A stretch of DNA of 64,000 bases from Podarcis gaigeae (lineage: Eukaryota). Where the stretch lies: assembly GCA_964106915.2 (NCBI GenBank), contig OZ066928.1. The stretch is one strand, 5' to 3'. The notes below the pieces were generated by a model. The model saw nothing but the letters and a program-made list of their open reading frames with translations, ran no database searches and had not been told where the DNA came from. Positions 1,214 through 57,779 of the stretch are shown here, in pieces. The position numbers were made by a program, and so were the translations under genes. Each line of letters opens with the position of its first letter. Position 1 is the stretch's first letter.

Positions 1214-12679
<11,466 letters not shown>

Positions 12680-24631: not shown

Positions 24632-25269
24632 TCATAAACCTTGGCCATATTGCTCCTCTGCTTTCTCTGTCCCTTCTTTGTGGGTGTCCTCAGAGTCCAA
24701 AAGGGGCTGGTGAAGACAGGACTGATGCTTGTCCCCCTTTCCCCAAGAAGCAGCTCGCACATTTGTTTGGTTATCCTTCAGGAAAAGAGGCAGCAGGTCT
24801 GCAGTGAAGGGGATGTCTCTGAAAGAATGCAGTAGGAAGATGCCAAGGACAATGGTGAGGAAGCCACTGATGGTGCCAATGATGTGCATCAGAACCAGAT
24901 GCTGCCACTCCTTGAACAGAATGGCAGAGCAAGTCATAACTGATGTGGTGAAGAGGACGTAATAGATGGGGGTCACTACAGATGTGTTGAAGATATCCAA
25001 GGCCTTGTTTAGGTAGTTGATCTGGATGGTGATGGAGATCACAAGGCAAATAAAAAGCAAATAGCTCAACGGTTCCTTCCAGACAGGCTTCCCAGCAAAC
25101 AGTTCTTTCAGGGCAATACCCAAGCCTTTTGCAGATGAGACAGAGAGTGAACCAATGGCAGAGCAGATCAAAACATACACTAAGACGTTGCTATGTCCAT
25201 AGCGAGGCCCAGCCACAAAGATGAGAAGAGCTGAACTCACCAGCATGCACACAGCAAACACTATAAATC
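24632..25269 (-). CDS. NIPA2-like last exon
   Basis: Encodes FIVFAVCM...[10 protein letters not shown]...QYGQGL*. Confidence 0.94.
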
Positions 25270-33846: not shown

Positions 33847-33912
33847 ATGAGCAAGAACAAAGATGATGCTCCCCATGAATTGGAGAGCCAGTTTATACTG
33901 AGACTGCCTCCG
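33847..33912 (+). CDS. TAF7: TAF7 coding exon 1
   Basis: Encodes [22 protein letters not shown]. Confidence 0.94.
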
Positions 33913-36900
33913 GTAAGAGACCCTTTGCAATAAATAGCCTCAAAGTGCTCTGTGCTTGCTTCCTGATTCTATTGCTGGAGGCATGAATATGGGTTGGTAC
34001 AGTGGGACCTTTCTGTACACCCATGTTCAGCCCACGTCTTCGGCGCCTGCATGGGCTGGGTGTCGGGAGCACCTTCTCTGACTTTCCGATCACAGGAACG
34101 TAGGAACATCCAACACAGCATTCCTGAGGAATAGGTCCTGGTGCAGTGGACTCACATTTGCTCACATGAGCACCTGAAACGCAGCAGAGTAACAGAAGCA
34201 AAGCTGTGGAGGTTTTGTTGCATACCTAATTTATTTCTTCTAATTAAACAAACAAAAGAACATAACAAACATGTACGAGAGAAACAGCTCTCTCATACTG
34301 CCATCTTGTTTCTAGACAGGTCAAAGAAAAAGACACATAGTGCTAGGGATGGAAGTCTAGAAGAGTAGCTTCCTCCCCCTCCTTTAGACAGAAAGTAAAA
34401 CAAACATGATCTGGTGATCCTTGCAAAGGGAAGGATGAAAATGCTGACAGTACTTACGGACCCGATCCATTCCAGGGTGCCGTTCGCACCCTGAAAAGTC
34501 CGCTAGAGTGCCGCTTCTGTGCCTGCATGTGACACAATAGAGCGCTCCTGCGCATGCGTGAAGTGCACAGATTGCTCCTGCACATGCGTGAAGCGGCGAA
34601 CCCGGAAGTAAACACGTCCTGGTTTGCCGCATTCGTAACCTGAAAAAACGCAACGTGAAGCAAAAGCAAATTGAGGTATGACTCTATTGTAAACTCTGCC
34701 TTTTCAGGAACATGCTTCTACTGTGCGGAGGGCAGTTCAGTCTGGAAGTGTCAACTTGAAGGACAGGCTTACCATAGAATTGCATGGTAAGAGGACCAGG
34801 TCAATGAGTTCTTACTTCTTGGGAGGTGTATCCAGTGCTAGTCCTTCTCAGAGTAGACCCACTGAAATGAATGGACATGGCTAACTTTGGCCTATTAATT
34901 TCAGTGAGTCTAGTCTGAGTAAAACTTAATCAGCTAGAACACTTGACTTTTGTTGTTACACATTTATTACCTTAAGCTATTCATCAGGTCCTGCAGTTTG
35001 GAACGCCCAGTCATTAGGAAGCTATTGGGTGGGGCTACATGAAATTGCTGGGGAGGGAGAGGGATTGTTCTGCCACTGATGCCTCTAAAAACAGTGGAAA
35101 AGTTGGATTAGTTTTTTGTAAATGGGAGTAGTACAACTGGTATTTTCTCCTATCTATACTTCAGGAAGATAATATATCTAATCCACGTTCCCACCTGTAA
35201 TGTTGGTTTCCACATGCATGAATATCACTTGATTTGATTGGCTGTTCAGTAGGTGACTTATGTGTTTGAGGTTACATGAGCATTATTTTAATGATAACCC
35301 ATTCACATTTGCAAGTTATCACTGAATGTTGCAGTAATCAAAGTTCTGCACAGTATGCCAGTATTATTTTTTTTGTTGTAAAGGAAAACATGATTGAGAT
35401 GTATAGGTGTCTTCCAACTTATGTGTGATCAACTCATGCGTGACTGGGAAATAATTAAATAATTCAATTCAAACCCAGAAATGGCAGGAGGGAGCTGGCT
35501 CACGAGGAGACCCTCTATGGAGCCTGAAGACGGTGCCAGTAAGGGCAGAGGAAGCCCCGAAGAGACCGGAAGCACAGTGGGGCTTTGTTCTGGCTGCTTA
35601 GCCTCCTTGTCTAACATCCGACATGTGGGGTAGCTCAGGAGCAGCAGCCTCTTTCCCATGCAGCCTCCAGCTGACCCCAGAATGTCAATTCTAGTTGTGC
35701 ATATTTTTTGATACAGTATTTTTGGTATGAGAGGGAGTTTAGAGGGTGCGCCACGCTTTATACGATTTCATTTATGTGTGCAGGGGGCTGGAAGCAACCC
35801 CCTTGTTAGTGTGGGGATGCCTGTATAAAATGATGCGGACACAGAGAAGTTTTTCTCACTCTCTCATAGAATTTGGCATCCCATGGAGCCAAATGTTGAG
35901 AGGACAGACAAAAGGAACAACTTCTTCACATAATTTGTAGTTAATAGTTTATAGTTACTGTGTAATTTGCTACCCCAAGATGTAGTGATGGCCAGCAGCT
36001 AGGATGATTTTAAAAGAGAATTGGACAAATTCATGGCTACTGGTGGCTGCTAGTTCTGATGGCTACATTGCCTCCAATATCAGAAGCAGTATGCTTCTGA
36101 ATACCAGTTGAGGAGGAACACAAGCAGGAGATTATTGCTCTTATGCCCTCAGGGTGACCATTGAGGCAAATAGGAAACTGAGCTAGATATGCCTTTGGTC
36201 TGATCCAGCAGGGTTCTTATAAAGTAGCACACATGCATACATGTTAAACATGCCAGAACTGTGTTTTGAATTGCTAATAAGATACCACGAATCTTCAAGT
36301 GCAAGCCTACTTTCCTCTCTGCAGCAGATGGCCGCCATGGGATTGTGCGAGTAGACCGGGCCCCATTAGCCGCCAAGCTGGTGGACTTGCCTTGTATCAC
36401 AGAGAGTTTAAAAACAATCGATAAGAAGACTTTCTATAAGACAGCAGATATTTGCCAAGTAAGTATTGTCTCATGGTCTGGATATCAGACTTTCTCTGTC
36501 CTCCCTGTGTCTTGTACACAGTCTCAATTTTGCCCCACTCTCATTTCCATGCTAGAAGCTCTTTATGGATGTTCCACGATGTAAAACATCTACACCCAAT
36601 TTTGAGTGTGAGAAATTCCTTACAGTTGGCTGTTCCCCCAAAGCAAGAAAATTGAACGGTCTTAGAGAGGCTTGTGCCTCATACTGTTGGTGACAAAATG
36701 GTTGGTTGTCTCCTCTTCTCCCCAGTGCTTTCATATCCAACCAGTGCTGGCTTCAGATTTTGGCCAGCCTTCAGGCACAATGATCTCGATGGGGCCCTTA
36801 CCTCCATGAGTTCAAGAATTCAAATACCAAAATAATAGGAAGGTACAAATATTAAACAAAACCTATACCATACTGAAACTTCAGATGGTTACATCCATAG

Positions 36901-39900
36901 CCATAAATAAGAATAATGTGCACAAATGTGTGATAATAAAGTTTAATATTACCAGCATAATAGTAATATGAATGTTACTAGAGCCTTCAGGTACCCAGCA
37001 GTGTGAATCCCTGACACTGACCTTGCATATAATGGTTGCCTCTCTTTGTGGGGATTTAGATGCTTGTGTGCACTGTGGATGGTGAACTATACCCTACTCA
37101 GGAAGAGCCAGCGCCAGCGACTACTGATGCTAAAACTCCTTCAAGTACCGATGTCAAAGCCAATAAGAAGAAAGACAAAGACAGAGAGAAGAAGTTCCTC
37201 TGGAATCATGGCAGTGAGTAGAATATTTCATTTCACCTTCCTTACTCGACTTTGTGCCCGCTTCTCACTCTACCTCCAGAAAAGTCCCTTCCATTGATCC
37301 TCAAGGAGTTGGAGTATTGTTTGCCAATACAATACGACTAAGATTCACCCTCACCCTCTTGGTTTCTTCGAAATCGGGGAGCTGCCATTGGCTGTTCTCG
37401 TCTTTGCTGCCTAGCTCACTGCTCAAGGAGAGATCCATTTTCCCTTAGTAAGTCACAATGCCCTTCAGCTCTCCCTTTTGCCCCATGTAATTAATTTGCT
37501 GTGATGTTCCAGTTACTCTCCCACTGAAGAATGTGAGGAAGAGGCGGTTCAGGAAGACAGCCAAGAAGAAGGTGAGTTGCATCTCCTTGTTTGGTGTTAG
37601 CTTTGAATCGTTGCTCACACATGCTGTGGCAGAAAGCCAACCACAGTGCAAACTGAAGCAGGCTAAAAGTTCCACCAGATCAGATAAATGTTCACCAGTC
37701 TGGCATGATTTCATTGCTACATTGACAAGAAAGACAACAACAGAGGGTCACCAGCACAGTTGTGTCTCCATCTAGAACTTTCAATGAATGTATATTTGAT
37801 AGCTTGCTATAGTTGATTAAACCCATAAGAAGGACCTGAGCTCAATAGCCTGTTTTCATTTATGATTCCTAGCACCTGGTATTCAGAATCAGGTATGTGT
37901 CTGATACTGGAGGTAATATATAGCCTTCATGAGTAGTAGCCACAGTTTCAAAAGATGCACATTGCTTCAAACATTCTTTCTTATAGGAAAAATCCCACTA
38001 TAGATCATTCTGGTTTCTTAAAAAAACAAACAAAGAGAAATCACATGTCCTTGACTGACAAAATATAGTAATCCAGTCAGCAGGAACAGATTGACCAGTC
38101 TTGTGTGGTCTGTTTTGTTGTTGCTGTTTTTCAAGTGGAATTCCCATGATTCACTGATTTATATTTTTCAGTGTTTAAAATAAGAGAGCATAGAATATTT
38201 TAAGGCAGCTTCCCCCAACCCAGTGCCCTCCAGATGTTTTGAACTTGTACTCCCATCCTTGCCAGCCCAGGTTACCAATGGTCAGGGATGATGGGAGTTG
38301 CAAGAGAGAGTGGGGGCCCTCACTGTGATGGGGAAGGCTATGTGCTAAAGTGTGCCAAATGATCCTGAATATGCAGATCTAAAAACCGTAAGAAGTTCCT
38401 TGCTGGAACAGACCAAGGTCTGACTTATCCAGCATTCTTTGTGAGAATCTGAGCGATCAGGAAGCACTAAGTGATGTGCCATAAATTGTCCTCCCTGGTC
38501 TGCTGGTAGACCACAGTCTCCTTTCCGCCCATCTCCATTTGAAGGCCTTTGGAGAAGAAGTTGTGCCTTGCTTGGAATAATTGCAGGAATCTTGCAGGAT
38601 GGCTCAGGAATGCCTTTGAAAATGTAGGTAGAAAGGTTGCAGGTGTGTCTGTGGCATCCAGTAGGAATGACACTTTGGGCTGAGGCACAACCAACTTGTG
38701 GGTGCATAATATTGTTTCTCTTTCTTTCTTCCTCTCTGGCCCAGTACATTGAGTCTCCAGATGTGGAAAAGGAAGTGAAGCGCCTTCTGAGCACAGATGC
38801 TGAAGCTGTTGGAGTCCGTATCCTTTCTTTCTAGTGGTTGCTTTTTATGTAGACCAGTTTGCCATCTTAGCCTGAATACACAAGTGCTGAATGTGTGTTT
38901 GGGGGCAGAGGTATCCCACAATCTTGACCCCAGCAAGCATTGCATGCTTGTCCTCGCATGCATTGTGTGTCTCCTCTCATCCCCCACACTTGTGACTTTC
39001 TGCATGTTGCTCTGGTTAGGCCAGCTGGTGGTGGCTGTTGTTCTTTTTTTGCATTTGTATGGATGCAAGTAGAATTCTGTGTATGGCAAAGACCCAGAGT
39101 GGAAGAGTCTGCTTGCATCTGACTGAATGTGAGCAGACATATCCTGGCGGCATCTTTCTTGGGATTTATGGCACTTACAGAGGCTAGTCCATTAGGGCAC
39201 CTTGGGCACTGCCTTGCTAACTGTCCTCAGTCTGCCCTCAGCTGGTCACATCTGCTTGCCTTGCTATTTTCCTCCAGTCTGAAAAGTGGAATTGCTTGTC
39301 AGCTTCCTCTTTCTCAGTCTCAGTATTGCCCTTGTAAAACTCAGCAAGGAGGAGGGTGGGAACAGAACCAGAGTTACTGGCTCCACCTATCCTTGTCTCT
39401 GGTTGTACCTACTGTTCGTCTTCCTACCTTCTGCCCCACTAGTTCCAGTGGGTACCAGCCACCACTGCATTGTACCATACCTGTTCAGGAAAGCAGTGTG
39501 TGCAAAAACGAACAGGTGTAGACATCAATTAATGTGCTTCAGTGGAAAGCTGGAGAGTGTTTTCTAATCATCTGAAGAATATTGCTGTAGCATCAATTTT
39601 CCAGCGCAGATTCCATTTTTCTAGAGGATGCCTCCCTATTGAGCTGGTTTTTCCTTGACTCTTCTGTATCTGTTCTGAGGCTGGGAGGTCATTGCCGAAG
39701 ATGAAACAAAAGACCCTGACAACCATGGTTCACTCACAAGCTTGGATATTTCTTCTCCTGGACTGTCTGGACACAAACCAAGCCATGGTACTGCAGGTAT
39801 TGTCAAACTTCAGTAGCTCCCTAACTTGAAGAGCTGTAGATCATCTTATCTTGTATGCCAGAGTTTGAAGGTTCAGTCCCTGATACCTTAATAGGTATTT

Positions 39901-42611
39901 TGTGGTTTTATATCTTGGTTTTATTCTGTGAACTGCCCTGAGACCCCTGGGTGTAGGTAAAGGTAAAGGACCCCTGACAGTTAAATCCAGTTGTGAACGA
40001 CTCTGGGGTTGCGGCGCTCATCTCGCTTTACTGGCCGAGGGATCCAGCGTTTGTCCACAGACAGTTTTTCTGGGTCATGTGGCCAGCATGACTAAGCTAG
40101 GTTAGCAGGAGCTGGGACTGAGAAACGAGAGCTCACCCCATTGCGGGGATTCAAACCGCTGACCGTCCGATCGGCAAGCCCTAGGCTCAGTGGTTTAGAC
40201 CACAGCACCACCCGTGTCAGTATATAAATTCAATAAATAATAATAACAACCTCCAGTTAAAATTATTGGGAACCAAGTGATGAGAAAGACCCCTTTCTGC
40301 TTTAGTCCTAGAGAGACATTGCCTTTCAAAGTGGACAATCCTGAGCTAAATGAGCAAAGAATCTGACCTAGTATAAGGTAGTTGCCTGTATTCATATTCC
40401 AACTTGCTGATGCTTATATTTCTAGATGCTGTCATGCAGATGGCTAAGTACAAAATATATAGATAGTAGCTTTTGGGTACAGTTTTCTGACCCAGTGGGC
40501 TAGAGAAGAATTTAACCTGGCCTGGCAAGGAAGCTGGAGGTCTTTAAATTAAAACAGCGTCAAGAAGGCTATTTGTTACCATGCTAACCAAAAGGTTAGC
40601 AACACTTTTCTAGGATAATTTTTACTGTGCATATTGTAAACTATACTCTTCGCTTTTTCCTTGTTGCTTCAAAGCGATAGAACATGCTGAGCTCCGGGAG
40701 ATGTTTAAGGATGTCAGCAGTACCAGCAGTGATGAGGAGGAGAGGGATGACCTGAACATCATGGACACAGAAGAAGACTTAGCGAGGAGACTGCAGTGCA
40801 AGCTGAATGAATCAGATGGGCAACAGCAAGAAAATGAAGGGTCCAACCAGATAGGTATGATGCCTGAGGCCCCCAGGGAGGGAGGCTGTACAGTAGATGG
40901 GGTGGTCAGCTTGAATCAGGACCTTACTCGGCTTGTGCCAGAATGTGCTGAGGATTGTTTGACTTGTTTCTGGAAGTGCTAAGTTTTCTGCTCTGTCTTC
41001 CAGCCATGGGAATCCAGAAGCAGATTGACAACCTGAAAGACAAGTTGCAGGAGACCCAGGACCGCAGAAAGCGCCAAGAGGATCTCATCATGAAAGTAGA
41101 GAACCTAGCCCTCAAGGTGAATTCAGCATCACCACCCCTTCTCTAGAGAAGGTCTAATAGAAGCCTGCTCAGCTCAGCTGAGTTTGGCAGGTGTTTATAG
41201 CTAATAGGCATCTCGTTCAGCAGAGACAATAGTCCCTACGGTGGTAGAGTATATGATTTGCAGAAAGTCCCAGGCTCGTTCCCTGAATATCCAGTTAAAA
41301 AATAAATTAGGTTGCAGTTGGTGAGTCTCTGCCTGAGACTCTGGAGAACCACTGCCAGTTGGGGTAGACCAGAGATGGGCAATCTTTTCAGACCACGTGT
41401 CACATTCCCAGATGGGCAGCCTTCTGGGGGGTGAGTAGCACAATAAATGTCAGATTTACTTTTGTGCAGTATTCGTCCATCACTGTCTTCCATGCAAGCA
41501 ACTAGGAGGCAGTAGCAGAGTTCAAGGACGCATTCCAGCCAGACAGTAGCATGCAAGGGAGGTTGTAAAGTAGGGCTTCTTAGGGGTGTGGCTTGGGGAG
41601 ATTCCCGTGGGCCAAATAGAGCAGCCTGGAGGGTGACATTTGACCCCCTGGCATGATATTTACGCACCCCTGCAGTAGACAGTACTGAACTAGAATGTCA
41701 GCATTCTTCAGCCTTGAGTCTCCAGGTATTGTCTGACTACAGTTCCCATAATCTTAACTTAAGTAATTGTCGGGGATGATAGACGTTGTAGTCCATCAAC
41801 ATGGAGATCCATGGCTAAAGGAACACAAGATGGTCAACAAACTGACCTCATAGAAAGCAGATTCGTCTTGGGGAGCAGGTAGGTAACCCTAGTATATCAG
41901 GGCTCACTTCCTAGACAATAATTTGAGAAAGAACCTGAATAGGTAACCAAGTTTTAAGGAGAGTAATACAGCCCTGTGCTGTTTTCATCTTAACCCGTGG
42001 CTTGAGAAAATCCACACCCTTGGGTTATGCAGCAGCACAACCTGCGATTTTGCCACAGTTGCCTTTTTTGTGGTTGGTCTGTGTGGGAGGTCAGTGCAGG
42101 CTGAAGACCCAGCTGTGCGCATGAAACTGCCCTTTGCAAAAGAAAACCTATATGTGTTGTGTTCTTTTGTTAGAAAAGTACAGGAGCAACAGCCACATTT
42201 CCTGCCCATCTTGTTTTCCAGACCCGCCTCCAAGCTGTGCTGGATGAATTCAAACAGCAGGAAGAGCTAGAGAAGCAGCAGGTAAGGTGGTCTGTAAGGC
42301 TGACAAATGGGGCAGTACAGTTAATCAAGCTGCATTGTGAATCCACAAGCAATGCTAAAGTCTTTCCCCCATGTGATAATGAACCATATTTTCCCAACTG
42401 TGAACTTGAAAAGCTTTTTGTCATTTGAAAAAAAATTATGCTGCTGCTCTCTGGTAAGATACAGTGTGAAATGCTTGCCAGTAGCTGAACTGTCCACAAG
42501 TGCTTTGCAGTGTGGCTTAAGAGCTCTTAACCATATTTTGTCTCTCTACATTCTGTTTCTCTTCAGCTGGCCTCTCTTCAAGAGCAGCTAGAAGCCCTTA
42601 TGGAAAAGTGA
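33847..42611 (+). CDS. TAF7: TFIID subunit 7, intron-containing TAF7 (positional ortholog of mammalian TAF7L), 357 aa; join(33847-33912,34708-34786,36325-36458,37060-37213,37513-37571,38745-38817,39680-39796,40681-40854,41004-41116,42222-42281,42567-42611)
   Basis: [22 protein letters not shown]...LVDLPC...[13 protein letters not shown]...[19 protein letters not shown]...[15 protein letters not shown]...KVENLALK...LEALMEK*; 1074 nt in frame. Confidence 0.95.
34448..34686. mobile_element. Tc1/mariner-like MITE related to 28154-28398
   Basis: Reverse-complement similarity to that copy, including GCGCATGCG motifs. Confidence 0.6.
34708..34786 (+). CDS. TAF7: TAF7 coding exon 2
   Basis: Encodes [26 protein letters not shown]. 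Confidence 0.94.
36325..36458 (+). CDS. TAF7: TAF7 coding exon 3
   Basis: Encodes [44 protein letters not shown]. Confidence 0.94.
37060..37213 (+). CDS. TAF7: TAF7 coding exon 4
   Basis: Encodes [12 protein letters not shown]...EKKFLWNHG. Confidence 0.93.
37513..37571 (+). CDS. TAF7: TAF7 coding exon 5
   Basis: Encodes [20 protein letters not shown]. Confidence 0.94.
38745..38817 (+). CDS. TAF7: TAF7 coding exon 6
   Basis: Encodes [24 protein letters not shown]; followed by a U12-type donor. Confidence 0.92.
38818..39679 (+). other. U12-type (minor spliceosome) GT-AG intron
   Basis: 5' splice site GTATCCTTT; branch site TTCCTTGAC at 39651-39659; AG at 39678-39679; reading frame preserved (V-R|W-E). 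Confidence 0.9.
39680..39796 (+). CDS. TAF7: TAF7 coding exon 7
   Basis: Encodes [39 protein letters not shown]. Confidence 0.92.
39955..40218 (-). mobile_element. Sauria SINE, internally deleted
   Basis: Tail AGGTAAAGGTAAAGG and body similarity to the other copies. Confidence 0.85.
40681..40854 (+). CDS. TAF7: TAF7 coding exon 8 (alternative acceptor at 40675)
   Basis: Encodes [21 protein letters not shown]...DTEEDL...NEGSNQI. Confidence 0.9.
41004..41116 (+). CDS. TAF7: TAF7 coding exon 9
   Basis: Encodes [37 protein letters not shown]. Confidence 0.94.
41370..41672. mobile_element. hAT-like MITE
   Basis: CAGAGATGGGCAA...GCACCCCTG termini with a degenerate 8-bp TSD ending GTAGAC. Confidence 0.55.
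42222..42281 (+). CDS. TAF7: TAF7 coding exon 10
   Basis: Encodes [20 protein letters not shown]. Confidence 0.92.
42567..42611 (+). CDS. TAF7: TAF7 last coding exon
   Basis: Encodes [14 protein letters not shown]. Confidence 0.92.
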   Translation: MASLQEQLEALMEK

Positions 42612-44816: not shown

Positions 44817-44912
44817 ATGGAAGAAACGTATCTACTTAACGTGGAAGGAGTCAAGAAAAAGATTTTACATGGCGGTTACGGTCCGTTGCCAGATTTCAAA
44901 GATGGGAGCAAG
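44817..44912 (+). CDS. AIPL-like exon 1
   Basis: gccATGG; encodes [32 protein letters not shown]. Confidence 0.92.
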
Positions 44913-47900
44913 GTAAATGGCTGCAAGCATAGAAACCATTAAAAATGTGTAAATAGGATCATAGGAAGATGTCTTACACCATGCCAACCTGTCTCATCTA
45001 GCTCATGGTTGTTATATACTGAGTTGCAATGGCTCTCCCAAGGTTTTGGACAGGAGACTTTCAATCCCAGCTGGAGGTGCTGGGTACTTAAATAGGGACC
45101 TTTTGCATGCTAAGCATGCGCTCTGCCACTGAGCAAGAGCTCTTCAGCAGTTATTAGCAATTATGGCTAAATTGAACCTCCATGTTTGGAGGCAGTATAC
45201 CCCGAATTTGAGTGGCTGGGGTCGGCAGCATGGAAGTGCAATTGCTTTCATGTTCTGCTTATGGGTTTCCTGGATGCATGTTGCTGGCCACTGTTGGAAA
45301 TGGGTGCTGGACTAGGTAGGCCTTTGATCTGATTCAGCAGGTAGTTGATTCTTAGGTAATTAGGTAAAAAGATGGGCAGCAGAAAGGTTGACCTGGAACA
45401 CTCCTCTTTATTCCTCTGCCTTCTGTCTCTTCTGACTACTGGCTTTAGAAAGCTGTTTTTTGGTTACAGAAGTAAAGCACACAGTAATAAGGCAGTGAAT
45501 CCTTTTCAGTTGTATAATATGCCTAACGTCTATAGAGCTGTGGAGGCTAAGCGCTGTGTCAGGTGCTAGCCCTATTCAGAGTAGACCCATTGTAATTAAA
45601 TGACCTACTCTCAGTAGGACTAGCAGCCCTACATATTTAAGTTCCTGTCCTACTTTTCAGTTATGTGCTTTCGGAATTATGACGCTCATTTGCTATTGGT
45701 TAGCAGTTCAAAAGCACGTCAAAGTGCAAGTAGATAAATAGGTACCGCTCTGGTGGGAAGATAAACGGCGTTTCTGTGTGCTGCTCTGGTTTCACCAGTA
45801 GTGGCTTAGTCTATAATGATTTTATTGCATTAGCCATGTGGCCATAGCATAATATACATAGAAATAACAACATAAAATGGGGGTGGGGAGATAAAAGTGT
45901 ATGCCGTTCTGGGCGAATACTTTGAGAGAATGGGGATAACAAAGGTAACGGGAGATTTAAAACATCGAGTGACAGAGAATACAAAAAACAGGTTCGATTG
46001 TGCGGCATATCGACTACATCTGTGGTATTGAGGAAGGAGTTGGTGCCGCTTTCCTCTTCATCACACTAAGCAGGAAATTAGCTGTCATCTCGGTAATCCA
46101 ACAGTAAGAATCCTGCAGAAGAAGGGACACTATCCAAGGCTGGATTGGGAGATGAAGCTTGTTCATGAGAGGAGTTAGAAACCGAGATCTTTCATCTGTC
46201 CAGTTGGGGCAGAAGAGCATTACATGTTCCATAGTCTCCAGAGCCGTGTCATTGCAGGTGCATGTTCTATTTGCGATGGGAACTCTGGAGTAACGACCCG
46301 ACAGAACTGCTGTAGGAAAACAGTTGAGACGGGCACAGGTAAAGGCCCTTCGTTTAGCCTCCGAAGGAATTGTAAAGCAGTATAGAGGGATCCCTTCAGG
46401 GGGTGGAATAGCTAGGGCTAAGCCTGAACACGGCCCTCTTGCATGGGAAGCTGTGTTAGAGAAGTCAAGTTGCTCCAGCTTCTTTTTGATTAGAGGCTTA
46501 TACACTCTAAATTAAAAACAGTTTTGCGGTTCAAATTGAGAAGAGAGCGGAGTTTGAGATTAATTGTAGTTTTCCAAGGAGAATTATGAATATCTCTTAG
46601 GATCAGATTGGAGAAACTACCTCTAATTCGAGCATCCGATGGTAGTAGGTGGGAGCTGTAGGAAATGGCTCGACTCCATGCTCGTTTTACAATTGAGGGC
46701 TGGGCGAACTCAAGTCGTAAGGCTGCACCTGAGACACATCTTGGGACGCCGGAAAGAGACCTCAAAAACATATGAAGTGGGCGATCCAAGTTACCTGATA
46801 TTGCTGTAGTCCATACTTCGCAGCCATATAATAGTTTAGGGACAACTTTGGCATTAAACATTTGAATTGCTGCTGGAAGGTGTTTGCCGCCCTTCTGGTG
46901 ATAAAATCGTACAATGGCATTAGAGGTCGTGGTTGCAGCAAGAGAGGCAGATTGTAGATGGGTGGTCCAGGAGAGATTATAAGTAAATATTAAGCCTAGA
47001 TATTTAAAGGCTTTTACCTTTTCTAAGTAGTGGCTTAGTCATGCTGGCCACATGACCGAGAAGCTGTATGCCAGCTCCCTCAGCGAATAAAGCGAGATGA
47101 GCGCCGCAACCCCAGAGTCGTTTGCAACTGGACTTAACTGTCAGGGGTCCTTTACCTTTACCTTTAAAGGACAATAATTCCCACATAGGGAGAGGAAACA
47201 GAGCAGACTCCCATTCAGTGGAGGAAGGCAATAAATAATTGCTCCAGAACACTGTGGAAGGCAAAGCAAAGGTGGTTCTGAACTTCCAGGGGTTTAGATT
47301 TGAGCTGACTAGAGCCCTAACCATATTAACTTTAGTTTGCCTTTGATCCAGATCACATTCCACTTCCAGACGCTAAAAGACAACTTTGAGAGAACGGTGA
47401 TAGATGACAGCCGGGGCCCTGGCATCCCCATGGAGATTATTGTGGGGAAGATGTTCAAAATCGAGGTGTGGGAGACCCTTCTAACTTCCATGCGGATCGG
47501 CGAGGTGGCAGAGTTCTGGTGTGATGCTATTGTGAGTGTGTAATTGTGCCAGCATACCCTGAACACATGAAATTGTCAAGTTCATGCCTACCCTAATTAG
47601 CAGAAAGTTATTTGCAATTGACTATCAAGCACCTGGTACCCTTCAGATGCTGTTGAACTCCAACTCCCATCTTCCCATCTAGCATGGCCAGTGGCCAAGG
47701 AAAATGGGAGTTGTAGTCCGTCAACATCTGGAGAACACCACAGTAGCTATCCTAAAATATGCTCACAACTTCCCATCATTTGACCTAGCTATCCAGATTC
47801 ACTAAAATAGTTCCCCAGACTCCACCTTTTCAAAGTTTCTGGAACGTAGGAAGCTCCCTTATACCGTGCCAAATTATTGGTCCATCTGACCCAATACAGT

Positions 47901-50900
47901 CTACATTTAACTGGCTACGTATCTCCAGGGTCTTGGGAACAAAATGGTCTTTCCCATCACCAGCTACTTTATTATCTAACCCTACCCTCAGGATGTAATG
48001 CAGGAACTCTACCACTGAACTACATGCCTCATCAATCAATTTCCTTTTATCAAGTTCCTCTTGCGATAGATTCTGGAGTAAAGCAGGGATAGAAAATTGC
48101 AAAGGGTTTTGGACTTGAGGGGGCGGGGTGGGCTGTGGGTTCAAATACCTATTAACTTGCCTCTCGCCTTCAGGCCTTGGGCAAATTTCCGTTTCTTATT
48201 GTGAGTTGACTATGGGCTATTTCCAGGGCACCTGTATACTGAACATCCATCCTGATTTGTTTCCAGGGAGATTAAATAGCCAACATTGTCTAATGAACCT
48301 TTGTTCTGACTTCTTTGTGGGGAGGTTAGATGCTGCTGCATCAAAGCGAGTGTTATCCAGCACTTCCCAGTGCATCTTTCTCTCACTTTCCTGATCACAA
48401 AAAGTCTGTTCTTTTTTGGGGGGCGGGGAGTGGCCTTATTGTGCAAGACCTCTCTCCCCCACTCCACAATCCATTATAGTTGCACAACCTGAATTTGCCA
48501 GTGACTTGATCCTGTCCCAAAATATCGATAGTCTGGAAGTGTCCTAAGAGAATGCCAATGAGTAGGATGGGCTACGTTGTGCCTTTTTATGCTAAGATAA
48601 TGCAGATCCTAAGGGACGTGGGTGGCGCTATGGGTTAAACCACTGAGCCTAGGACTTGCCGATCAGAAGGTTGGCGCTTCGAATCCCCGCGATGGGGTGA
48701 GCTCCTATTGCTTGGTCCCAGCTCCTGCCCACCTAGCAGTTCGAAAGCACGTCAAAGTGCAAGTAGATAAATAGGTACCACTCTGGTGGGAAGGTAAACG
48801 GCGTTTCCGCGCACTGCTCTGGTTCACCAGAAGCAGCTTAGTCATGCTGGCCACATGACCTTGAAGCTGTATGCCAGCTCCCTCGGCCAATAAAGCGAGA
48901 TGAGCGCTGCAATCCCACAGTCGGTCATGACTGGACCTAACAGTCAGGGGTCCCATTACCTTTACCTTAATGCAGATCCTACATTAAGGAAAAAATACTA
49001 TCTTCCCTCTTGGACATCTGATTGTAGCACATCACATTTCCCATGCAAGGCCCTGTATGCTCTCTGCCCCAGTTTTATGGTTACCTCCTTCGCAATTTCA
49101 GCACACGGGAATGTACGCCTTGGTCTCCAAGGGCATGAGGAAAATTGCCGAGGGCAAGGACCCTCTGGAGGGCCAGAAGCATCGCTGTGGGATGGGCAAC
49201 ATGTTCGATTACTACACCACAGGCCACGCCGACCTGGATGAACTGCAGCAGACGCCACAGCCCCTTATTTTCATTATGGAGCTGTTCAAAGTGAGTGGGA
49301 GAATTAGAAGGAAACTACAGTTCCGTTGTGTAACGTGCAGTTGCCACCATCTATCTCATCAATGGATTATTTATGACCCTTATATTCCCCTTTCCTCCAA
49401 AGGAGGTCGATTGCTTTATCACACCCTCCCCCCTTTTTACCCTCACAACACCCCTGCGAAGTAGCCTGGGAGACAGCAACTGGCCATGGACACTCTTTGA
49501 ACACCACGGCTGCGTGGGGATTTGAGCCTCCTAGCCCAGTGTTCCCCAGGCCTAATTCAGCATCATTCTGGCTACTACATGCCACTGACATGGCAGTCAG
49601 TGCCAGTGAGTGCCAGTTAGTGCCCAGCTGTGTCAGATGCAAAAGCTTTTTGTAGATTCTACCACCACAGTTGGAGGGTAGAAGCATTTCTGCCCAAATA
49701 ACCCTCTTGCCCACCCCAAGGTCCTGGCACTTTGAAAACTGGCTTGTCAGAGAAAAGGGTTCAACGTATCTCATCCCTGATGTGCTGTTTTCCTATTGTC
49801 AGCCTGCCTATGCACAGCATACGTTTTCAGAAACCCTTGTCCAGGTTCTTCCACCATCTGCTGTGAACTGGGTGGTGACTTAGTAAGCGGACCTTCTCTG
49901 CTGCAGCTCCCACAGAAATCTTTGTACTGGGAGGTCCAGGTGCAGATATTAGAGCTGTCCACATGCACTGGGTGCTGAGCCAATTGGGGTGCCATCTCAA
50001 AGCTAGCCCTGGTGATCATCCAATGTTTATTGGATGGATTTTCCTCCTAAATTGATTTTTGATTTTTGAATTCTGAATTTATTGTTATTCATTTTTTATA
50101 CTGTATTTTATGCTGTTTTTTGTTGCATCAATTAAGTGTTTTAAATCTGTTGTTAACCGCCCTGAGCCCGGATTTTTGAACCGGGAAGGACGGAGTATAA
50201 ATAAAAATGTATTATTATTATTGTTATTGTTATTATTAAAGCTGGGTAAGCAAGGCACTGGGCTTTTGGGGAGGAGGTGTGAAGCTCTGGCAGGATCTAG
50301 AGTCCTCTCACCTCCAAAGCCTAGCTAGCACTTTCCCAGTTTTCAGCACCGAAAAGAAGATGGCGCAGAATGTGGGAATCCCCCTCTTGCAGGTGTCCTA
50401 GTACGGAGCCCCTGTGTAAGTGGGGGTTCCCCTGTAATAACTGTGGTTTTCCATCCTATCTAGGTAGAGGATCCCACTTCCTACAAGCGGGATACGTGGG
50501 CCATGAACAACGAGGAGAAGCTGCTGGCTGTGCCAAAGCTCCACACGGAGGGCAACCGACTGGTCCTTTCCAGGAAATTCAAGGAAGCGGCAGAGAAATA
50601 CCAGGAAGCTATCATCTGCTTGCGCAATATCCAGGCCAAGGTAAGAGTTGGGTGGAGATAAAATAAAAAAGTAATTGATTTAAAATATGTTGGCTCTAAA
50701 CAGGCTGTCTATCTCCATATTTGACTGCCCGTAGAGTAGGACTTTCTGTTGTTACAATCTAAGGCAAGCGGGGTAGCTGCCCAGGACAGGGTCTTCTCAG
50801 TGGTGTCCCCTTCAATTATGAAATGCTCTCTCCAGAGAGGTCTGCTTGGTGTGTTTTTTGTCGTCTTCTTGGCATCATGTAAAGACCTTTGCAGCAGCAG

Positions 50901-53900
50901 CAACAACAAAATATCCCAGGCCTCTTAGACAAAATTTTAGTTCTGTTGATTGTTTCACATGGCTTTCAAGATCTTGCTGCCATTCCAATGTTTGGGTTTA
51001 TTTAGATTTTTTTTTTCACTGTTCTTTTCTAAAAACTGTTTTGCATTTCCTTCTCATATGAATTGTTCCTATTATTTTTTATTTAAAAATCAAAAGGTGG
51101 TATTAATATGCATAATCCGAGCCATGAAGCAAGGAGAAGAATATGCTTCAGGCAGCGGAAGTGCAGGAGACAGTGCTCTACCTGATCTACTACTTCTCCT
51201 GCTGCCAGAGAGAGGGAAGCTTTGTAGCATATGGTGCTGCTCACCTTCCCTGCCCCTGGATAGAGGAGCTGAGTGTTGACACTTTGAGGAGCAACCCAGC
51301 TCCCGCCTAATTTGGTGAGGGCTGGGGCACGAAGGCGGCAGAAGTTGTTGGACTCAAACTCCCATCAGCCCGTGTCAGAATAGCCCTTCGGTGCAAGATG
51401 GTGGTGGAATTTGTAGTGCAACAGCCCCTGGAGGGCCAAAGGTTCTTCCATCCCTACAATATGGACCATAATGAAGGTTTTGAACATGGGTAGTCAAACT
51501 AAGGCCCAGGGGCCGGATCTGGCCCAATCGCCTTCTAAATCTGGACCATGGACGGTCCAGGAATCAGTGTGTTTTTACACGAGTAGAATGTGTGCTTTTA
51601 TTTAATATGTATCTCTGGGTTATTTGTGGGGCCTGCCTGGTGTTTTTACATGAGTAGAATGTGTGCTTTTATTTAATATGCATCTCTGGGTTATCTGTGG
51701 GGCCTAGGAATTCGTGGTCCCCCCCTTCAAAATATAGTCTGGCCTCCCACAAAGTCTGAGGGACAGTGGACCAGCCCCCTGCTGAAAAAGTTTGTTTTGA
51801 ATGTCCAGTGTTGGAGTATATTCTTGGACCACTCATTCCCCATGAAGAACTTAGCATGTCTGCTGTCTTGCCACCCCTAAAGTTAAACTGTATTTCACCT
51901 GGCCACTGTCTAGATCACCTGGGGATCCATATTTAAGCTATTCTGAGCTCTCTGTGAGAAAGAGGTGGATGCAAATAAATCATTTTGTTAATTAGCTAGG
52001 TGCTCTCTTTTGCCATGAACGAGCTTGTTGGCCTCCATGTCTCTGGTGTATGCTGCTGTGCCCCACCCTGAACACTGGCTGCAATGCAGGGAGTTTCTGT
52101 CTATTCTAAACCTTACCTGGAGATGCTGGTGATGGAACCTGGGACCAGCATGCAAAACCTGCAAAGCGGGTGCCTTTACCACTAAGCTACAACTCTTCTC
52201 CAAACCCACCTTCTTGTTCTTTGCTGGGTTTCTTCACAGGAGAAGCCGTGGGATGAAGACTGGATGAAGCTGGAGAATCTCATTACACCTCTTGTGCTGA
52301 ACTACTGTCAGTGCCAGCTGGAGTTGGGGGAGTATTATGAGGTGCTGGAGCACACAACTGACCTCCTGCAGAAGAACAATGGTGAGTGGTTCCTTCAGCT
52401 CACTACTTGCAGAACCCTCCTCTATCCTTTTCTGCATGTGCCAGGGCCCTACATTGCATGATCATAGAGATGTGCTCCAGCATTCCTCCTGTTGCCCTGA
52501 GACTACACATCTCACATCACATACAATTTTATTGGCCACCCCTGAAAACATCAATGACCAATGCAATTACTTGGGCAGTGTGTTAAGACTGGGTGAGCTC
52601 ACACGCTTTGTTCCTTTAAGTTATTTATGCTTCGAAAAAGAGCAAAGCAAACATTCGATACTAGTTTAGATGCATCCAACTGACATGCAATCACTGATGC
52701 ACAGGTCCTTTTGGACCTGGAAGAAGGCAGAAGAGGGTGGTATGAGGGTGGAGTGGGGTGCACTTATGTACACCCTGCCAATGTGTGCAGGGGCCGGGAA
52801 AAGAACCCCTGTGCAAAATAGTCACTGTCTGTATCAACAGCCTGCTTTTGCAGTCTTGAGGTCTAGATTTATCATTGTTATTATTATTAATTAAAGTTGG
52901 GGTTTTGAGAACACAGTGTTCTACGCTACTTACCAAATTATTCATGCATCATGATTGTGAAGCCGCAAGGTTCAGAACTGGTTCCAGGTTTTGGGGTGCT
53001 GTTGGGCAAGATGCTTTGGCGGGGTCTCCTCCCTCCATGAGTCCATCTCTTCCTTCCCACGATCACAAGTGTCACATGATCAGCACAGCAACAAGGCTCC
53101 CTATCAGGAGTGGAGGAAGTGCAGGCCTAGGGGCCAAATACAGCTGGATTCTTTGAAACTGAATGTAAACTCAGTTTACATTCTCCCAATGTGCAGGAGG
53201 AGGAGAGTGGGAGCATGTGAGCCCAGTTCTGGATTCCAACTGTATCAGCACGTTCAATGGCCAGGAAAGATGGGAGTACTGGGCAGCAGCATTTGGGGCA
53301 CCACAAGTTCTTTAGCTTTAGCTTCAGCATTATGTGTGATCCTACCCCATTGTGACTCAGTGAATAACTGAGGAGGGAACGCCAACAGTTGTGTTTGGTT
53401 TTATTGACCCATTGTCATCTGGCAATTTTACACAAAGCTACTGGTACCTCTGAGAGAGAGAGATTTAGGCTGTGTACACACCATACATTTAAAGCACACA
53501 CCCCTGCAAATAATTATTGTTAAGGGTGCTGTTAATTTTAGCTCTGTGTTATAATAATTTTAAGGTCCCAAATATGGAATATTCATAAATGTACACATAT
53601 CTAAATATATGAACCGTGTGTCTGAAATAGTATGGGAGAGCAATCCTGAAGCCATTTTGACTCTCCCAAAGTACTTCAAATATTCCTCTGCAGTAAGGGA
53701 GGCAAAGAGAGAAAGCCTTCCCATTGTCTTTTTGCTTGCAAATCCTATCTTAAGGGCACGTTTGTGTATGAATAGGGTGAGCCTGTGGCCTAAAGTATTA
53801 ACCATCACAAAAGAAAGGCCAGGCTGCCCACAATCAGTGACCATTATCAGGTAGGCAGGATTTCTGCTGTAGACCGCTTCTTTCTGTGATGTATGTATGG

Positions 53901-56134
53901 TGTTTAGGGGTGGTGGTCTTGGGGTACAGGGTGGGCAGTTTCAAAAGGCCTTGTGAACTATTGTTCAGGGTTGTCCTCCCTCCTGCGCGTGGTGGGTTGC
54001 AACAGTTCCGTGAATAAAGATCAGGCTTATTAGCCGCTTTACTTCTCAATATACTCTGCTATTTTCTCCTACCGATAGGGCTCTGTACCCATAATGCCCC
54101 ATAAGGGAAAGGGAGCAGTTTTTCTTATAACATCTGTAAGGGGTGAGCAACAATTCCCAGTATTCTTTGGTGGGAGGAACTGCACTTTAAATGTATGTTG
54201 TGTACACAGTCATTGTGTTACCCAAGTGGCCTGACTTCAGTCTCATGTGGTCCACTCAGATGATAACATAAGAAACACCCTATCCTTACATGGCCCAGGA
54301 AAGCAGAATACTGAGAGTGAAGGCTTTTAACAGATAACTCTGTAATTTATTAGATTTGTTTATGAGAGCTAGCAAACCAACTGACGTTGTTCTTTTGCTA
54401 GAAAATGTCAAGGCGTATTTCAAACGGGCTAAAGCCCACGCTGCTGTCTGGAATGAAAAGGAGGCCCGAACAGACTTTTTGAGGGTGGCCCACCTGGATC
54501 CATCGCTGACTGCCGCTGTGAGGAAAGAATTGAAGCTCTTGGGGGAGAGGATGAGGAAGAAGCACGTGGAAGACCGCAAGAAATACAAAGATCTCTTCCA
54601 GCAGCCTTCTCCTAAAGGAGAAACTGAGGGGAGAGCAATGGAGGAGACAGAAAAGCTGTCAGATTCTAGCCTCGGCCCACAAACAGAGGAAAATAATCAA
54701 GAAACCCTGAGGCCTGAGAGAGGAAGAGAAGAAGGGAGATGGATGGGTGCAACAGAAGCAACAGAAGAAACAGAGCAAGGGAACTTAGCAGAGAAAGAGG
54801 ATGGATTCCTAATGAAGACAGGCGAAATGGACAAAGAGGACATCACCCCTCAGAAAGCGAGGGAAGAGGAAATAGGAAATAAAGATAAAGGAATGATGGA
54901 GAGTCATTCTGGAGATGACCTGACAGGCTGTGAAACCTCTGGAAGCAAGGAACAGTTAGAGTTTGGGCAGTGGAAGCTTGAAGAACAGAGGGGGAAAGTG
55001 GAAGAGATTAATTCTGGGGCTGAGGATTTTCCAGTGCTGGAGGAAAAGGACGCAGAAAGAAGAGCCGTCCCTGGGAGCCCTGGGAAGAAATTAGGGGGAG
55101 TTGCAGGAAACCATGTGAGCAGCAGCGTAGGGGAAGGGTTCATTAAAGGACCTTGTGAGATTGGAGTGGGCATTGAAACAGAGAACTTCCCAAGAGAGAC
55201 GGAAGGATATGAAGAAAGTTGTGGGAAACGAGAATCCCAAACTGTTGAATTGTCAATGGTACAGGGTGATAAGGGCTTTGGAGCAGAGGATCCCAAGGAT
55301 GGGGTTATAGTGGAGAGCCCTCAGGAAAGTAGTGAAAAAGATGACTTCCAAATCCTTCAGGAAAGATCAAAGACAGAAGCAAGTGTGGCAACAGAACTGA
55401 GGAAAAAGGTCAGTTCTGACTGGGAAAACTGTGGTGGGCCAAGAAAGGAGAATTATACTGGAGAGGAGGAGGAACCTAAAGAAGAAACAAAATTGGGAGA
55501 GAAAAGAAGAGAAGATAATGATCATTCCATTCCAGAAGAGGAGACACGTTGCTGTGAAGCAGGCCCAGAGCATTGTGAGGGAGAGGCAGACCCAGAAGAC
55601 TTTAAAAGTGTGGCAACTGGTGATTATGTGAAAATAACAGATGTTAGGGCCAAGGAAGTGATAAGCCTCGAATCACAGCATGCCAGAGAAGAGGGGGGTG
55701 GCCACAGAGATGTGGCTGGGTGTAGGGAGGAAGGAACTGAAGTTGGTGACAGATCTAGGCTGTGCAAAGATGCACAAGGAGATGAGGTAGACCAAGATTG
55801 GTTCAAGGCAGAAATAAGCTTTAAAGCTGATGATCTGGAGATGGGAAAGAGAGGGGAGGATTCCGAGACAGAGCAAGCAGGTCTGCAAGTTAGGGGGGAA
55901 GAGCCAGAAGCGAAAACAGGCAGGGAAGCAGAACGGATTGTGGGGCAAGACTCTCTATGGGGCAATGGTGAGGTGTCAAGAAAGGAGGATGGAGATACAG
56001 AAGATATTTCATTGGCCACCCACTGCAGAGGAGACAAAAGTGAAGTGCTGGAGTTGCCTGGATCTGGAGCAATGGGTGAGCCGAACATTTCTACCCTGAG
56101 ACAACGCAACCTGATGAAAGAGGAAACCCAGTGA
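44817..56134 (+). CDS. AIPL1-like (aipl2-type) FKBP-TPR co-chaperone with a long acidic C-terminal tail, 838 aa; join(44817-44912,47352-47531,49102-49290,50464-50640,52240-52381,54402-56134)
   Basis: [20 protein letters not shown]...FHFQT...RTVIDDSR...[18 protein letters not shown]...LNYCQC...YYEVLEHT...[17 protein letters not shown]; six-exon layout (96/180/189/177/142 nt plus last exon) like AIPL1. Confidence 0.93.
45700..47166 (+). mobile_element. Sauria SINE split by a LINE insertion
   Basis: 5' part at 45700-45811 and 3' part at 47026-47166 with the ACCTTT tail. Confidence 0.85.
45812..47025 (-). mobile_element. 5'-truncated non-LTR retrotransposon (RTE-X-like; clade uncertain)
   Basis: Encodes ...LLYGCEVW...CTC...[11 protein letters not shown] (zinc knuckle) with one frameshift; 15-bp TSD AGTAGTGGCTTAGTC. 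Confidence 0.85.
47352..47531 (+). CDS. AIPL-like exon 2
   Basis: Encodes [22 protein letters not shown]...[10 protein letters not shown]. Confidence 0.94.
48612..48967 (+). mobile_element. Full-length Sauria SINE
   Basis: GGGACG head, ACCTTT tail and 14-bp TSD TAATGCAGATCCTA. Confidence 0.92.
49102..49290 (+). CDS. AIPL-like exon 3
   Basis: Encodes [21 protein letters not shown]...[12 protein letters not shown]. Confidence 0.94.
50464..50640 (+). CDS. AIPL-like exon 4
   Basis: Encodes [20 protein letters not shown]...[15 protein letters not shown]. Confidence 0.94.
51485..51797. mobile_element. hAT (Charlie-like) MITE with an internal tandem duplication
   Basis: CATGGGTAGTCAAACT...GGCCC subterminal motifs; an internal unit of about 70 bp is repeated. 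Confidence 0.6.
52240..52381 (+). CDS. AIPL-like exon 5
   Basis: Encodes [47 protein letters not shown]. Confidence 0.94.
53547..54132 (+). mobile_element. Solo LTR nested in a palindromic MITE
   Basis: TGTTATAA...TTATAACA termini, 4-bp TSD TCTG and AATAAA at 54013. Confidence 0.82.
54402..56134 (+). CDS. AIPL-like exon 6 (TPR3, capping helix and Glu-rich extension)
   Basis: [13 protein letters not shown]... stays open for 1733 nt to TGA. Confidence 0.88.
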
Positions 56135-56195
56135 GGAGGAAGAGAGTCAGGTATGAAAAATAGTGGGTTGTAGAATCAGTTGCTAAGGTCTAGGG

Positions 56196-56374
56196 CAGAG
56201 CTTTCCAAACTGTGTCTCACGACATGTTAGTGTGTTGGCTGCAGTGTGCTCCTCCCAGGGCTGGAAAGGGGGTAATTTAACCTCCAGTTTGCTAATAAAA
56301 CTGAATTACTGTCGCAAAATGATGCGTTTCTTTTTTAAAGTGTGTCACCAACATAAAAAGTTTGGAAAGCTCTG
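56196..56374. mobile_element. hAT-like MITE in the AIPL-like 3'UTR
   Basis: Perfect 16-bp TIR CAGAGCTTTCCAAACT. Confidence 0.8.
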
Positions 56375-57072
56375 GCCTGTGGTGATATTGGGGAGCAGGG
56401 TCAGAGTGAAAGTGTGCTAGCTAATGATCGTTGATGTGGCCAGCTCATCTTGTTGAGAACAGGCAACTCAGGGTCTGGTGCAGTAATCAAAGGCTCAAGG
56501 AGGGAGCTGCCATTGCATCTACACCTAAGAAAACAAGCATGCTTGCCCCTTCTTGGGTCTGCTGGTATTCTCTTCAGTTTCCTTCCTCAATTGAAGAACT
56601 GTCTGCAAAAAAGTGCTATACAGGGTCATCTTGCCATCCTCATTCAGCCACTGCACGTGTACTCGGAAAATAAACCTCCTCTTTGCCACCACAGGCAAAG
56701 TCTAAAATTTCAGATGCAAGCCAGAGATGGGTTATGATTTCCATTCCCCTGCCCCAAAGATTCTTTGCAGATTTAAAAAAAAAATGTATTGTGCTATAGC
56801 TGTACAGTGCCTAGAGAACTCATTTATGAGGCATCCAATGAATAGAAATAAAGTTGAAGGTGTTTTGAGAAAGGGATTGGTGCTTTTGGTGGTGTTGATT
56901 ATTTTTGCTGTTGCCCTGGAAAACAGGTTTTGCATTTGGTCAGAGAAGACAGGGAGGGTATTTAAAAATGCACGAATGCAAGGTTAACAGGATCCTCAGC
57001 ATCTGCAGGGCACTGCTCCTCAGTGTCATCTGCTTATCCTCATCCCATAAGTACAGTATATGGCATCTCCTA

Positions 57073-57454: not shown

Positions 57455-57779
57455 ATGGCATCTCCTAGATATAGCTTAAAATCTGCCATTTTAACTTTTC
57501 CACGGTGCCTTCTAGTGTAGCTAAGGCATTGAGGGAAATATTGAAATGTTGATATCCCAGACAAAACTTTTGGTGGTATTAATCTGCAGTGCAACAAGTG
57601 GAAGAAAACAAGGACAAATGGAAGTGTGGATATAGGCCCTATTTTTTTGGGGGGGGGGGAAATCATTTTAAAGCATTTTTTTTTTCAGGCCACATGCAAA
57701 GAAGGAACATAAAAAAGAACCTTGTGCTTTTCTCAAGAAAGGGGAAATTCCTCCAAAACAAAAAAATGAAGCAACACAG

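What the first reader, a model, noticed from the sequence alone, without database searches (positions are those of the whole stretch)
54601..56134. AIPL-like photoreceptor chaperone with a ~510-aa Glu-rich tail encoded by one purine-rich terminal exon
Seen: after the TPR capping helix the frame stays open for about 510 more codons. By hand count about 95 are Glu, with many Gly, Lys and Asp and few hydrophobic runs, giving an 838-aa protein. Known: AIP and AIPL1 are about 330 aa, and primate AIPL1 adds only a short Pro-rich tail. Photoreceptors use acidic disordered regions elsewhere (RPGR-ORF15, CNGB1 GARP), and RPGR-ORF15 is glutamylated by TTLL5. Inference: this may be an undescribed chaperone architecture in which a disordered acidic arm binds Ca2+, is glutamylated, or tunes PDE6 maturation in the cone-rich lizard retina.
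Basis: partly seen in the sequence, partly recalled or inferred. Interest (0 to 1): 0.8.

Follow-up and report, generated by a model that had tools for sequence, protein, structure and literature searches.

The report
Lizard AIPL2 chaperone's long acidic tail
A lizard eye chaperone gene (AIPL2, lost in placental mammals) really does encode a 510-residue floppy acidic tail; reptiles and birds keep the tail open and glutamate-rich while its exact sequence drifts, and I found no paper that describes or tests it.

Summary
Observation confirmed. Six exons encode 838 aa; 54602-56131 adds 510 aa (95 Glu, net charge -62) after the last TPR helix. Spliced contigs from four studies of two related species join exon 5 to 6 and run through the tail. 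The gene is AIPL-2 (zebrafish aipl1b type), beside BTK, NIPA and TAF7. The tail is not lizard- or cone-retina-specific: 83 of 111 tetrapod/coelacanth database models carry 140-590-aa tails, 82 acidic. Selection keeps frame and Glu, not sequence: 26/26 tail indels are in frame versus 23/119 in flanks; codon positions change almost equally; Glu is the most retained residue. It lacks an ORF15-type basic C-terminus. Best reading: a bulk-charge disordered arm that aids or tunes the HSP90/PDE6 co-chaperone (inferred, 0.45). Side finding: ray-finned fish AIPL-2 carries a duplicated second TPR domain there, so zebrafish gosh Q413* probably does not test the acidic tail. Present in RefSeq models, undescribed in papers searched. 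The scan had only a first-reader note on this same window.

The parts
44817..44912 (+). AIPL-2 coding exon 1 (ATG)
   Evidence: matches paddlefish exon 1 (36)
47352..47531 (+). Exon 2, FKBP-like domain (PF23322)
49102..49290 (+). Exon 3, FKBP-like domain with AIP/AIPL insert
50464..50640 (+). Exon 4, first TPR motif
   Evidence: (weak PF07719)
52240..52381 (+). Exon 5, second TPR motif; spliced to exon 6 in transcript contigs
54402..54601 (+). Conserved 5' part of exon 6: third TPR motif with clamp Lys265 and capping helix 7 (residues 262-328)
54602..56134 (+). Acidic Glu/Gly-rich tail, residues 329-838 plus stop; same terminal exon
56031..56099 (+). 69-nt (23-codon) in-frame deletion in one transcript contig of a related species; 7-nt microhomology at its ends, not GT-AG
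   Evidence: (table 8, X2 record 20)
56135..56852 (+). 3' UTR; contigs reach 56713-56814, interrupted by a repeat near 56190-56374; AATAAA at 56294, 56669 and 56847 (site in use not determined)
5713..5943 (+). BTK kinase-domain exon (synteny marker)
24632..25306 (-). NIPA Mg2+ transporter last exon (synteny marker)
33793..41119 (+). TAF7/TAF7L exons (synteny marker, immediately upstream)

Best explanation
The gene is the lizard AIPL-2, an HSP90 co-chaperone of the AIP/AIPL family. Shown here: gene structure, transcription of the tail, orthology, and selection on frame and Glu content. Taken from orthologue and paralogue data: the FKBP-TPR core binds HSP90 through the TPR groove and helix 7, and matures photoreceptor PDE6 (zebrafish aipl1b, PMC5381001; mouse AIPL1, PMC8857470). 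Inferred: the tail is a disordered polyanionic arm that works through length and charge, not through a motif. It would keep the co-chaperone and its nascent PDE6 client soluble (an ATP-independent holding role). By sweeping over the basic TPR groove it would also weaken or time the competing binding of HSP90 and Pgamma. It would be a much larger, independently evolved counterpart of the acidic Pro-rich tail of primate AIPL1.
For: Frame held: 26/26 in-frame indels versus 23/119 in flanks, P=1.6e-15. Past a relative's stop, 4 of 5 indels shift frame. Neutral simulation leaves 300 codons open in at most 5% of runs, even at 0.1 substitutions per site. Sequence nearly free: substitution rates 0.145/0.143/0.165 by codon position, NG86 dN/dS 0.5-0.8 versus 0.04-0.2 in the core. 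Glu retained 78% versus 64% for other two-codon residues, P=1.5e-5. Tails of birds, turtles, a crocodilian, newts and squamates do not align with each other, yet stay about 15-32% Glu. Low predicted fold propensity. Lys265 and helix 7, needed for PDE6 maturation, are intact. The primate tail is reported to add holding activity and to lower HSP90 affinity slightly. Acidic disordered tracts act as ATP-independent chaperones in DAXX and YTHDC1.
Against: No functional data exist for the tail. Lizard tails are far less dense (15-23 D+E per 50 aa) than bird tails (up to 33). Mammalian AIPL1 matures PDE6C without such a tail, and one study finds the primate tail dispensable. The single-sequence AlphaFold run is weak evidence of disorder, because it also scored a folded FKBP domain low. 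The tissue of the transcripts is unknown.
Confidence: 0.45

Rival explanations
1. Localisation bristle: the large charged coil keeps AIPL-2 in the inner segment or at the cilium base by size and charge exclusion, so the chaperone releases PDE6 before outer-segment entry.
For: Fits selection on length and charge without motifs. AIPL1 is found from synapse to inner segment with enrichment at the cilium. The steric exclusion principle is from my own knowledge.
Against: Mammalian AIPL1 without a long tail is already inner-segment localised. There is no localisation evidence for AIPL-2.
Confidence: 0.18
2. Tolerated passenger: the tail does little as protein. Early stops are purged only because they would leave a 3' UTR of over 2 kb and destabilise the mRNA, and an acidic composition is the least harmful one.
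For: Near-neutral substitution pattern; 31 of 35 listed differences to close relatives change the residue; distal 105-130 aa lost in Rhineura and Crotalus; tail length varies about fourfold.
Against: Preferential Glu retention. Similar composition persists in non-alignable tails over more than 300 My. Clean deletions would remove a useless tail without lengthening the UTR, yet no well-assembled sauropsid locus checked here lacks it.
Confidence: 0.15
3. RPGR-ORF15-like: the Glu/Gly-rich tail is glutamylated by TTLL5 and the modification controls its function.
For: Purine-rich terminal exon, Glu/Gly bias, photoreceptor gene family; bird tails have Glu runs up to 8.
Against: TTLL5 is recruited by a C-terminal RPGR helix. 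Here the last 60 residues are net acidic in every tetrapod tail, unconserved, and truncated in two lineages. The longest Glu run in this lizard is 4.
Confidence: 0.1
4. GARP-like: the tail is a low-affinity Ca2+ buffer or sensor, or binds mature PDE6, as the disordered Glu-rich GARP2 does in rods.
For: GARP2 is disordered, Glu-rich and binds PDE6; the tail carries 130 carboxylates.
Against: No sequence similarity found. GARP2 is an abundant outer-segment protein, whereas AIPL1-type chaperones sit mainly in the inner segment. The tail has 68 basic residues mixed in and no EF-hand.
Confidence: 0.1

Closest known systems
Zebrafish Aipl1b / aipl2 (gosh; PMC5381001) and the AIPL-2 clade (bioRxiv 10.1101/2022.07.13.499904)
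   Same: Orthologue: same locus near BTK and TAF7, FKBP+TPR core 65-71% identical to fish and 84% to chicken XP_001233085, long C-terminal region noted as not homologous to the primate PRD.
   Different: Ray-finned fish have TPR - acidic linker - second TPR - tail over 8 coding exons (paddlefish). The lizard has one TPR domain and a single 510-aa acidic tail with no TPR remnant.
Mammalian AIPL1 (with primate Pro-rich domain)
   Same: Same domain order; best PDB match of the core; Lys265 and helix 7 kept; the primate tail is also disordered, acidic, length-variable and placed after helix 7.
   Different: Paralogue at another locus; its tail is 56 aa, Pro-rich and primate-only, versus 150-590 aa, Glu/Gly-rich and 3.9% Pro here.
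AIP (AhR-interacting protein)
   Same: Helix 7 end aligns best with AIP.
   Different: AIP ends at about residue 330 and is ubiquitous.
RPGR ORF15
   Same: Long purine-rich terminal exon, Glu/Gly-rich, tolerant of in-frame indels.
   Different: No repetitive Glu tract and no conserved basic C-terminal docking helix; no sequence similarity found.
PolyD/E chaperones (DAXX, YTHDC1) and GARP2
   Same: Acidic disordered region on a proteostasis or PDE6-linked protein.
   Different: Lower acidic density (at most 20 D+E per 50 aa here); no homology; activity untested.

Membership tests
AIP/AIPL co-chaperones | N-terminal FKBP-like domain PF23322 | tested here: met
   exons 2 and 3
AIP/AIPL co-chaperones | Three-motif TPR domain plus helix 7 with clamp Lys265 | tested here: met
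AIP/AIPL co-chaperones | Binds HSP90 and matures its client | not testable with these tools
   inferred from PMC8857470 and PMC5381001
AIPL-2 clade (aipl1b/aipl2) | Locus between BTK and DRP2 | tested here: inconclusive
   BTK, NIPA and TAF7 upstream in the same order as paddlefish, which has the DRP2-like gene downstream; DRP2 itself was not detected within the window
AIPL-2 clade (aipl1b/aipl2) | Groups with chicken XP_001233085 and fish/coelacanth aipl2 | tested here: met
   All listed hits are of this group; core nests in squamates 95/96. The tree had no AIP or AIPL1 outgroup.
AIPL-2 clade (aipl1b/aipl2) | Photoreceptor (cone) expression | tested here: inconclusive
   Transcribed and spliced, but tissue not on record
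RPGR-ORF15-type TTLL5 substrate | Conserved basic C-terminal helix that docks TTLL5 | tested here: not met
   C-terminal 60 aa net -2 to -15 in all tetrapod tails, unconserved, truncated in two lineages
RPGR-ORF15-type TTLL5 substrate | Glutamylation in retina | not testable with these tools
   needs GT335 blot or mass spectrometry
PolyD/E chaperones | Dense D/E tract (35 or more in 50 aa, threshold from my own memory of the DAXX paper) | tested here: not met
   maximum 20/50 in this lizard, 33/50 in some birds
Actinopterygian double-TPR AIPL-2 | Second TPR domain after helix 7 | tested here: not met
   TPR profile scores fish tails about 245-265 bits and all tetrapod tails under 2 bits; no remnant downstream in six frames

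The most novel reading that the evidence does not exclude
AIPL-2, reported to be the only AIPL of reptiles and birds, needs a second arm after its TPR domain to mature cone PDE6. Ray-finned fish supply it as a duplicated TPR domain, which could hold HSP90 and Pgamma at once although they compete for one groove in mammalian AIPL1. Tetrapods supply it as a long polyanionic disordered arm under selection for charge and length. This would be an undescribed cone-chaperone mechanism that placental mammals lost with the gene.
Probability: 0.15. Interest if true: 0.72.

Novelty: new variant of a known kind. Interest (0 to 1): 0.45.

Why it matters
AIPL1 loss causes Leber congenital amaurosis, and how this co-chaperone hands PDE6 between HSP90 and Pgamma, and what the primate tail does, are open questions (PMC12733016). 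The AIPL-2 paralogue offers two natural add-ons at the same position, an acidic arm and a second TPR domain. Both can be tested at once in the existing HEK293 PDE6C maturation assay. It is also a clean example of a coding region selected for frame and charge while its sequence drifts. It would change how the zebrafish gosh model is described: the protein probably has two TPR domains, unlike human AIPL1. Interest is limited because the tail already sits in many automatic RefSeq models and may prove a modest modulator.

Tried and rejected
(1) Unused read-through or 3' UTR: rejected by spliced contigs and frame conservation. (2) Lizard-specific novelty: rejected. (3) Tail as a decayed second TPR domain: no signal. 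(4) Hidden domain: Pfam none (9); word search of the tail finds only Rhineura (25); ESM Atlas has no usable hit (68). (5) Tandem-repeat origin in this lizard: only a 30-nt repeat at 54749-54778. (6) HSP90-like EEVD or CaaX ends: absent in the lizard and not conserved. (7) gosh Q413* as genetic proof that the acidic tail is needed: rejected. In cypriniform relatives residue 413 falls in the start of the second TPR domain, upstream of further introns by the paddlefish gene structure, and the mRNA is lost in the mutant. The zebrafish sequence itself was not retrieved. (8) Short bird models as real tail loss: the cassowary model stops at a 1573-nt assembly gap, which I left unfilled. (9) DRP2 not found in 56200-64000. 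(10) AlphaFold of bichir AIPL-2 from a single sequence was uninformative.

Full report
Observation. The window holds a six-exon gene on the + strand: 44817-44912, 47352-47531, 49102-49290, 50464-50640, 52240-52381 and 54402-56134. All introns are GT-AG and the product is 838 aa. Residues 1-328 are an FKBP-like plus TPR core. The last conserved helix aligns to the very end of human AIP. The frame then stays open for 510 codons: 95 Glu, 60 Gly, 37 Lys, 35 Asp, net charge -62, 68.8% purine. The two other + frames have 22 and 43 stops; shuffles give 30 stops on average and never more than 196 open codons. There are no N in the window.

Expression. Contigs from four independent studies of two related species (about 95-97% identical) splice exon 5 to exon 6 at exactly this GT..AG intron. 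In three runs one contig continues through the whole tail past the stop, to 56219-56286; in the fourth, two contigs cover nearly all of it. No intron-like joint inside the tail is listed, and the contigs read through the internal AATAAA/ATTAAA at 54878 and 55142. Further contigs reach 56713-56814. One contig lacks 56031-56099, a 69-nt in-frame deletion with microhomology ends. None of the 35 listed tail differences creates a stop. Limits: the runs are guessed to be RNA, tissue is not recorded, the difference tables are truncated, and contigs drop rare isoforms.

Identity. Searching the conserved start of exon 6 returns 210 proteins. Those listed are AIPL-like proteins of ray-finned fish, coelacanth, newts, turtles, a crocodilian, birds and squamates, including chicken XP_001233085 and entries named 'interacting protein like 2'. 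The core is 93% identical to Sceloporus, 90% to Rhineura, 84% to chicken and 65-71% to fish, and nests in squamates (no AIP/AIPL1 outgroup). The only hit of the tail alone is the amphisbaenian Rhineura at 55%, which suggests a lacertid source (inference). BTK, NIPA and TAF7 lie upstream in the order seen in paddlefish, where a DRP2-like gene follows. This is the locus described for the AIPL-2 ohnologue, lost in placental mammals and frogs and reported as the only AIPL of reptiles and birds (bioRxiv 10.1101/2022.07.13.499904). Its zebrafish orthologue aipl1b is cone-specific and required for Pde6c stability (PMC5381001).

Distribution of the tail. Of 111 non-actinopterygian models, 83 have tails of 140 aa or more and 55 of 300 or more; 82 of the 83 are net acidic, median 21% Glu. 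In all nine other sauropsid loci fetched with a long model, the tail lies in the single terminal exon. The one short model checked (cassowary) ends at an assembly gap. Tails align within squamates (26-55% to this one), within birds and within turtles, but not between these groups. So the tail is a feature of the AIPL-2 clade rather than of diurnal lizards, and many RefSeq models contain it under names such as 'uncharacterized', 'golgin-like' or 'neurofilament-like'.

What selection keeps. In five squamate pairs aligned as DNA, all 26 indels in the shared ORF are multiples of three, against 23 of 119 in the flanking intron and UTR (Fisher P=1.6e-15). Beyond the earlier stop of Rhineura or Crotalus, 4 of 5 indels shift the frame, an internal control. 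The test is partly conditioned on both ORFs being open, but the flank rate predicts about 75 frameshifts in the aligned length, and neutral simulation closes the frame at a median of 20-60 codons. Amino-acid sequence is close to free: substitution rates by codon position are 0.145, 0.143 and 0.165, and NG86 dN/dS is 0.5-0.8 (probably an underestimate) against 0.04-0.2 in the core. Glu is the most retained residue, 78% against 64% for other two-codon residues, P=1.5e-5. No convincing motif is conserved, and the distal 105-130 residues were lost twice. FoldIndex is negative nearly throughout. AlphaFold pLDDT falls below 50 after the TPR helices, weak evidence on its own because single-sequence runs also fail on folded domains. 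Together this is the signature of a disordered chain valued for length and negative charge.

Fish differ. All ray-finned fish full-length models examined carry a second complete TPR domain, 40-61% identical to the first in the eight compared. It follows an acidic linker of mostly 45-115 aa and is usually followed by another charged tail. In paddlefish this is a tandem duplication of exons 4-6 with the same intron positions, and the clamp lysine is kept in most second copies. Tetrapod tails show no TPR remnant. Both fish copies are followed by a charged extension, so a short acidic extension of exon 6 probably predates the duplication (inference). The gosh allele Q413* falls, by position in cypriniform relatives, at the start of the second TPR, and the mRNA is absent in mutants. 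It shows that the long fish ORF is real, but it does not test an acidic tail.

Mechanism. Shown: structure, transcription, orthology and the selection pattern. From literature: the core needs Lys265 and helix 7 to bind HSP90 and mature PDE6; Pgamma and HSP90 compete for the basic TPR groove; the primate acidic Pro-rich tail, at the same position, is reported to add holding activity and weaken HSP90 binding, though one study finds it dispensable; acidic disordered tracts can be ATP-independent chaperones. Inferred: the tail is a bulk-charge arm that solubilises the complex and tunes access to the TPR groove (0.45). Rivals are a localisation bristle (0.18), a tolerated passenger (0.15), ORF15-like glutamylation (0.10; no docking helix) and GARP-like Ca2+/PDE6 binding (0.10).

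Novelty. Gene, clade and core function are known. Ten literature searches found no description of the sauropsid acidic tail or of the fish second TPR; one figure legend notes only that the zebrafish C-terminus is not homologous to the primate domain. The library lacks most subscription papers. Verdict: new variant of a known kind, interest 0.45. Following operator instructions, the spliced model was searched exon by exon by reference and the joined search was left out. No contig was taken for human, and no gap was filled.

Noticed in passing
L004:14496-16425 (paddlefish); proteins P0001-P0004, P0121-P0149: Ray-finned fish AIPL-2 has a second full TPR domain from a tandem duplication of exons 4-6. 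I found no description in the papers searched, and it changes the reading of the zebrafish gosh allele.
   Followed up: yes
P0115 and P0120 (Pleurodeles, Lissotriton): Newts have AIPL-2-like proteins (73-74% to the exon-6 core) with 150-aa acidic tails, although the clade is reported lost in amphibians; synteny not checked.
   Followed up: partly
P0033 (UniRef100_A0A7N5JWL6): An entry labelled giant panda nests with Python and Crotalus (100/98) in the core tree: probably snake contamination or a mislabel.
   Followed up: partly
L011:5606-7178 (cassowary): A 'partial' 336-aa bird model ends at an assembly gap; Glu/Gly-rich open frame resumes after it. Many short bird AIPL models may be artefacts. 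Gap left unfilled.
   Followed up: partly
L001:10942-12288 (Rhineura): The burrowing, reduced-eye worm lizard keeps an intact AIPL-2 with core dN/dS 0.09 and a 382-aa tail.
   Followed up: partly
window 55355-55460: Cluster of at least 17 differences in about 105 nt against close relatives, mostly residue-changing; either a fast patch or misalignment near an indel.
   Followed up: no
window 6712-9039 (-): 775-aa reverse-transcriptase ORF of a LINE element, downstream of the BTK exon at 5713-5943, possibly intronic; named from its motifs only.
   Followed up: no
window 14367-17073, 44020-44130, 45700-47170, 48610-48960, 57080-57450: Several dispersed repeat copies (RTE/Bov-B-like LINE fragments and Sauria-SINE-like elements by appearance), some in AIPL-2 introns.
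   Followed up: no
window 56190-56374: Short high-copy repeat inside the 3' UTR; it carries the AATAAA at 56294 and breaks transcript contigs.
   Followed up: partly
window 24632-29202 (-): NIPA-family Mg2+ transporter between BTK and TAF7, at the same place in paddlefish.
   Followed up: partly
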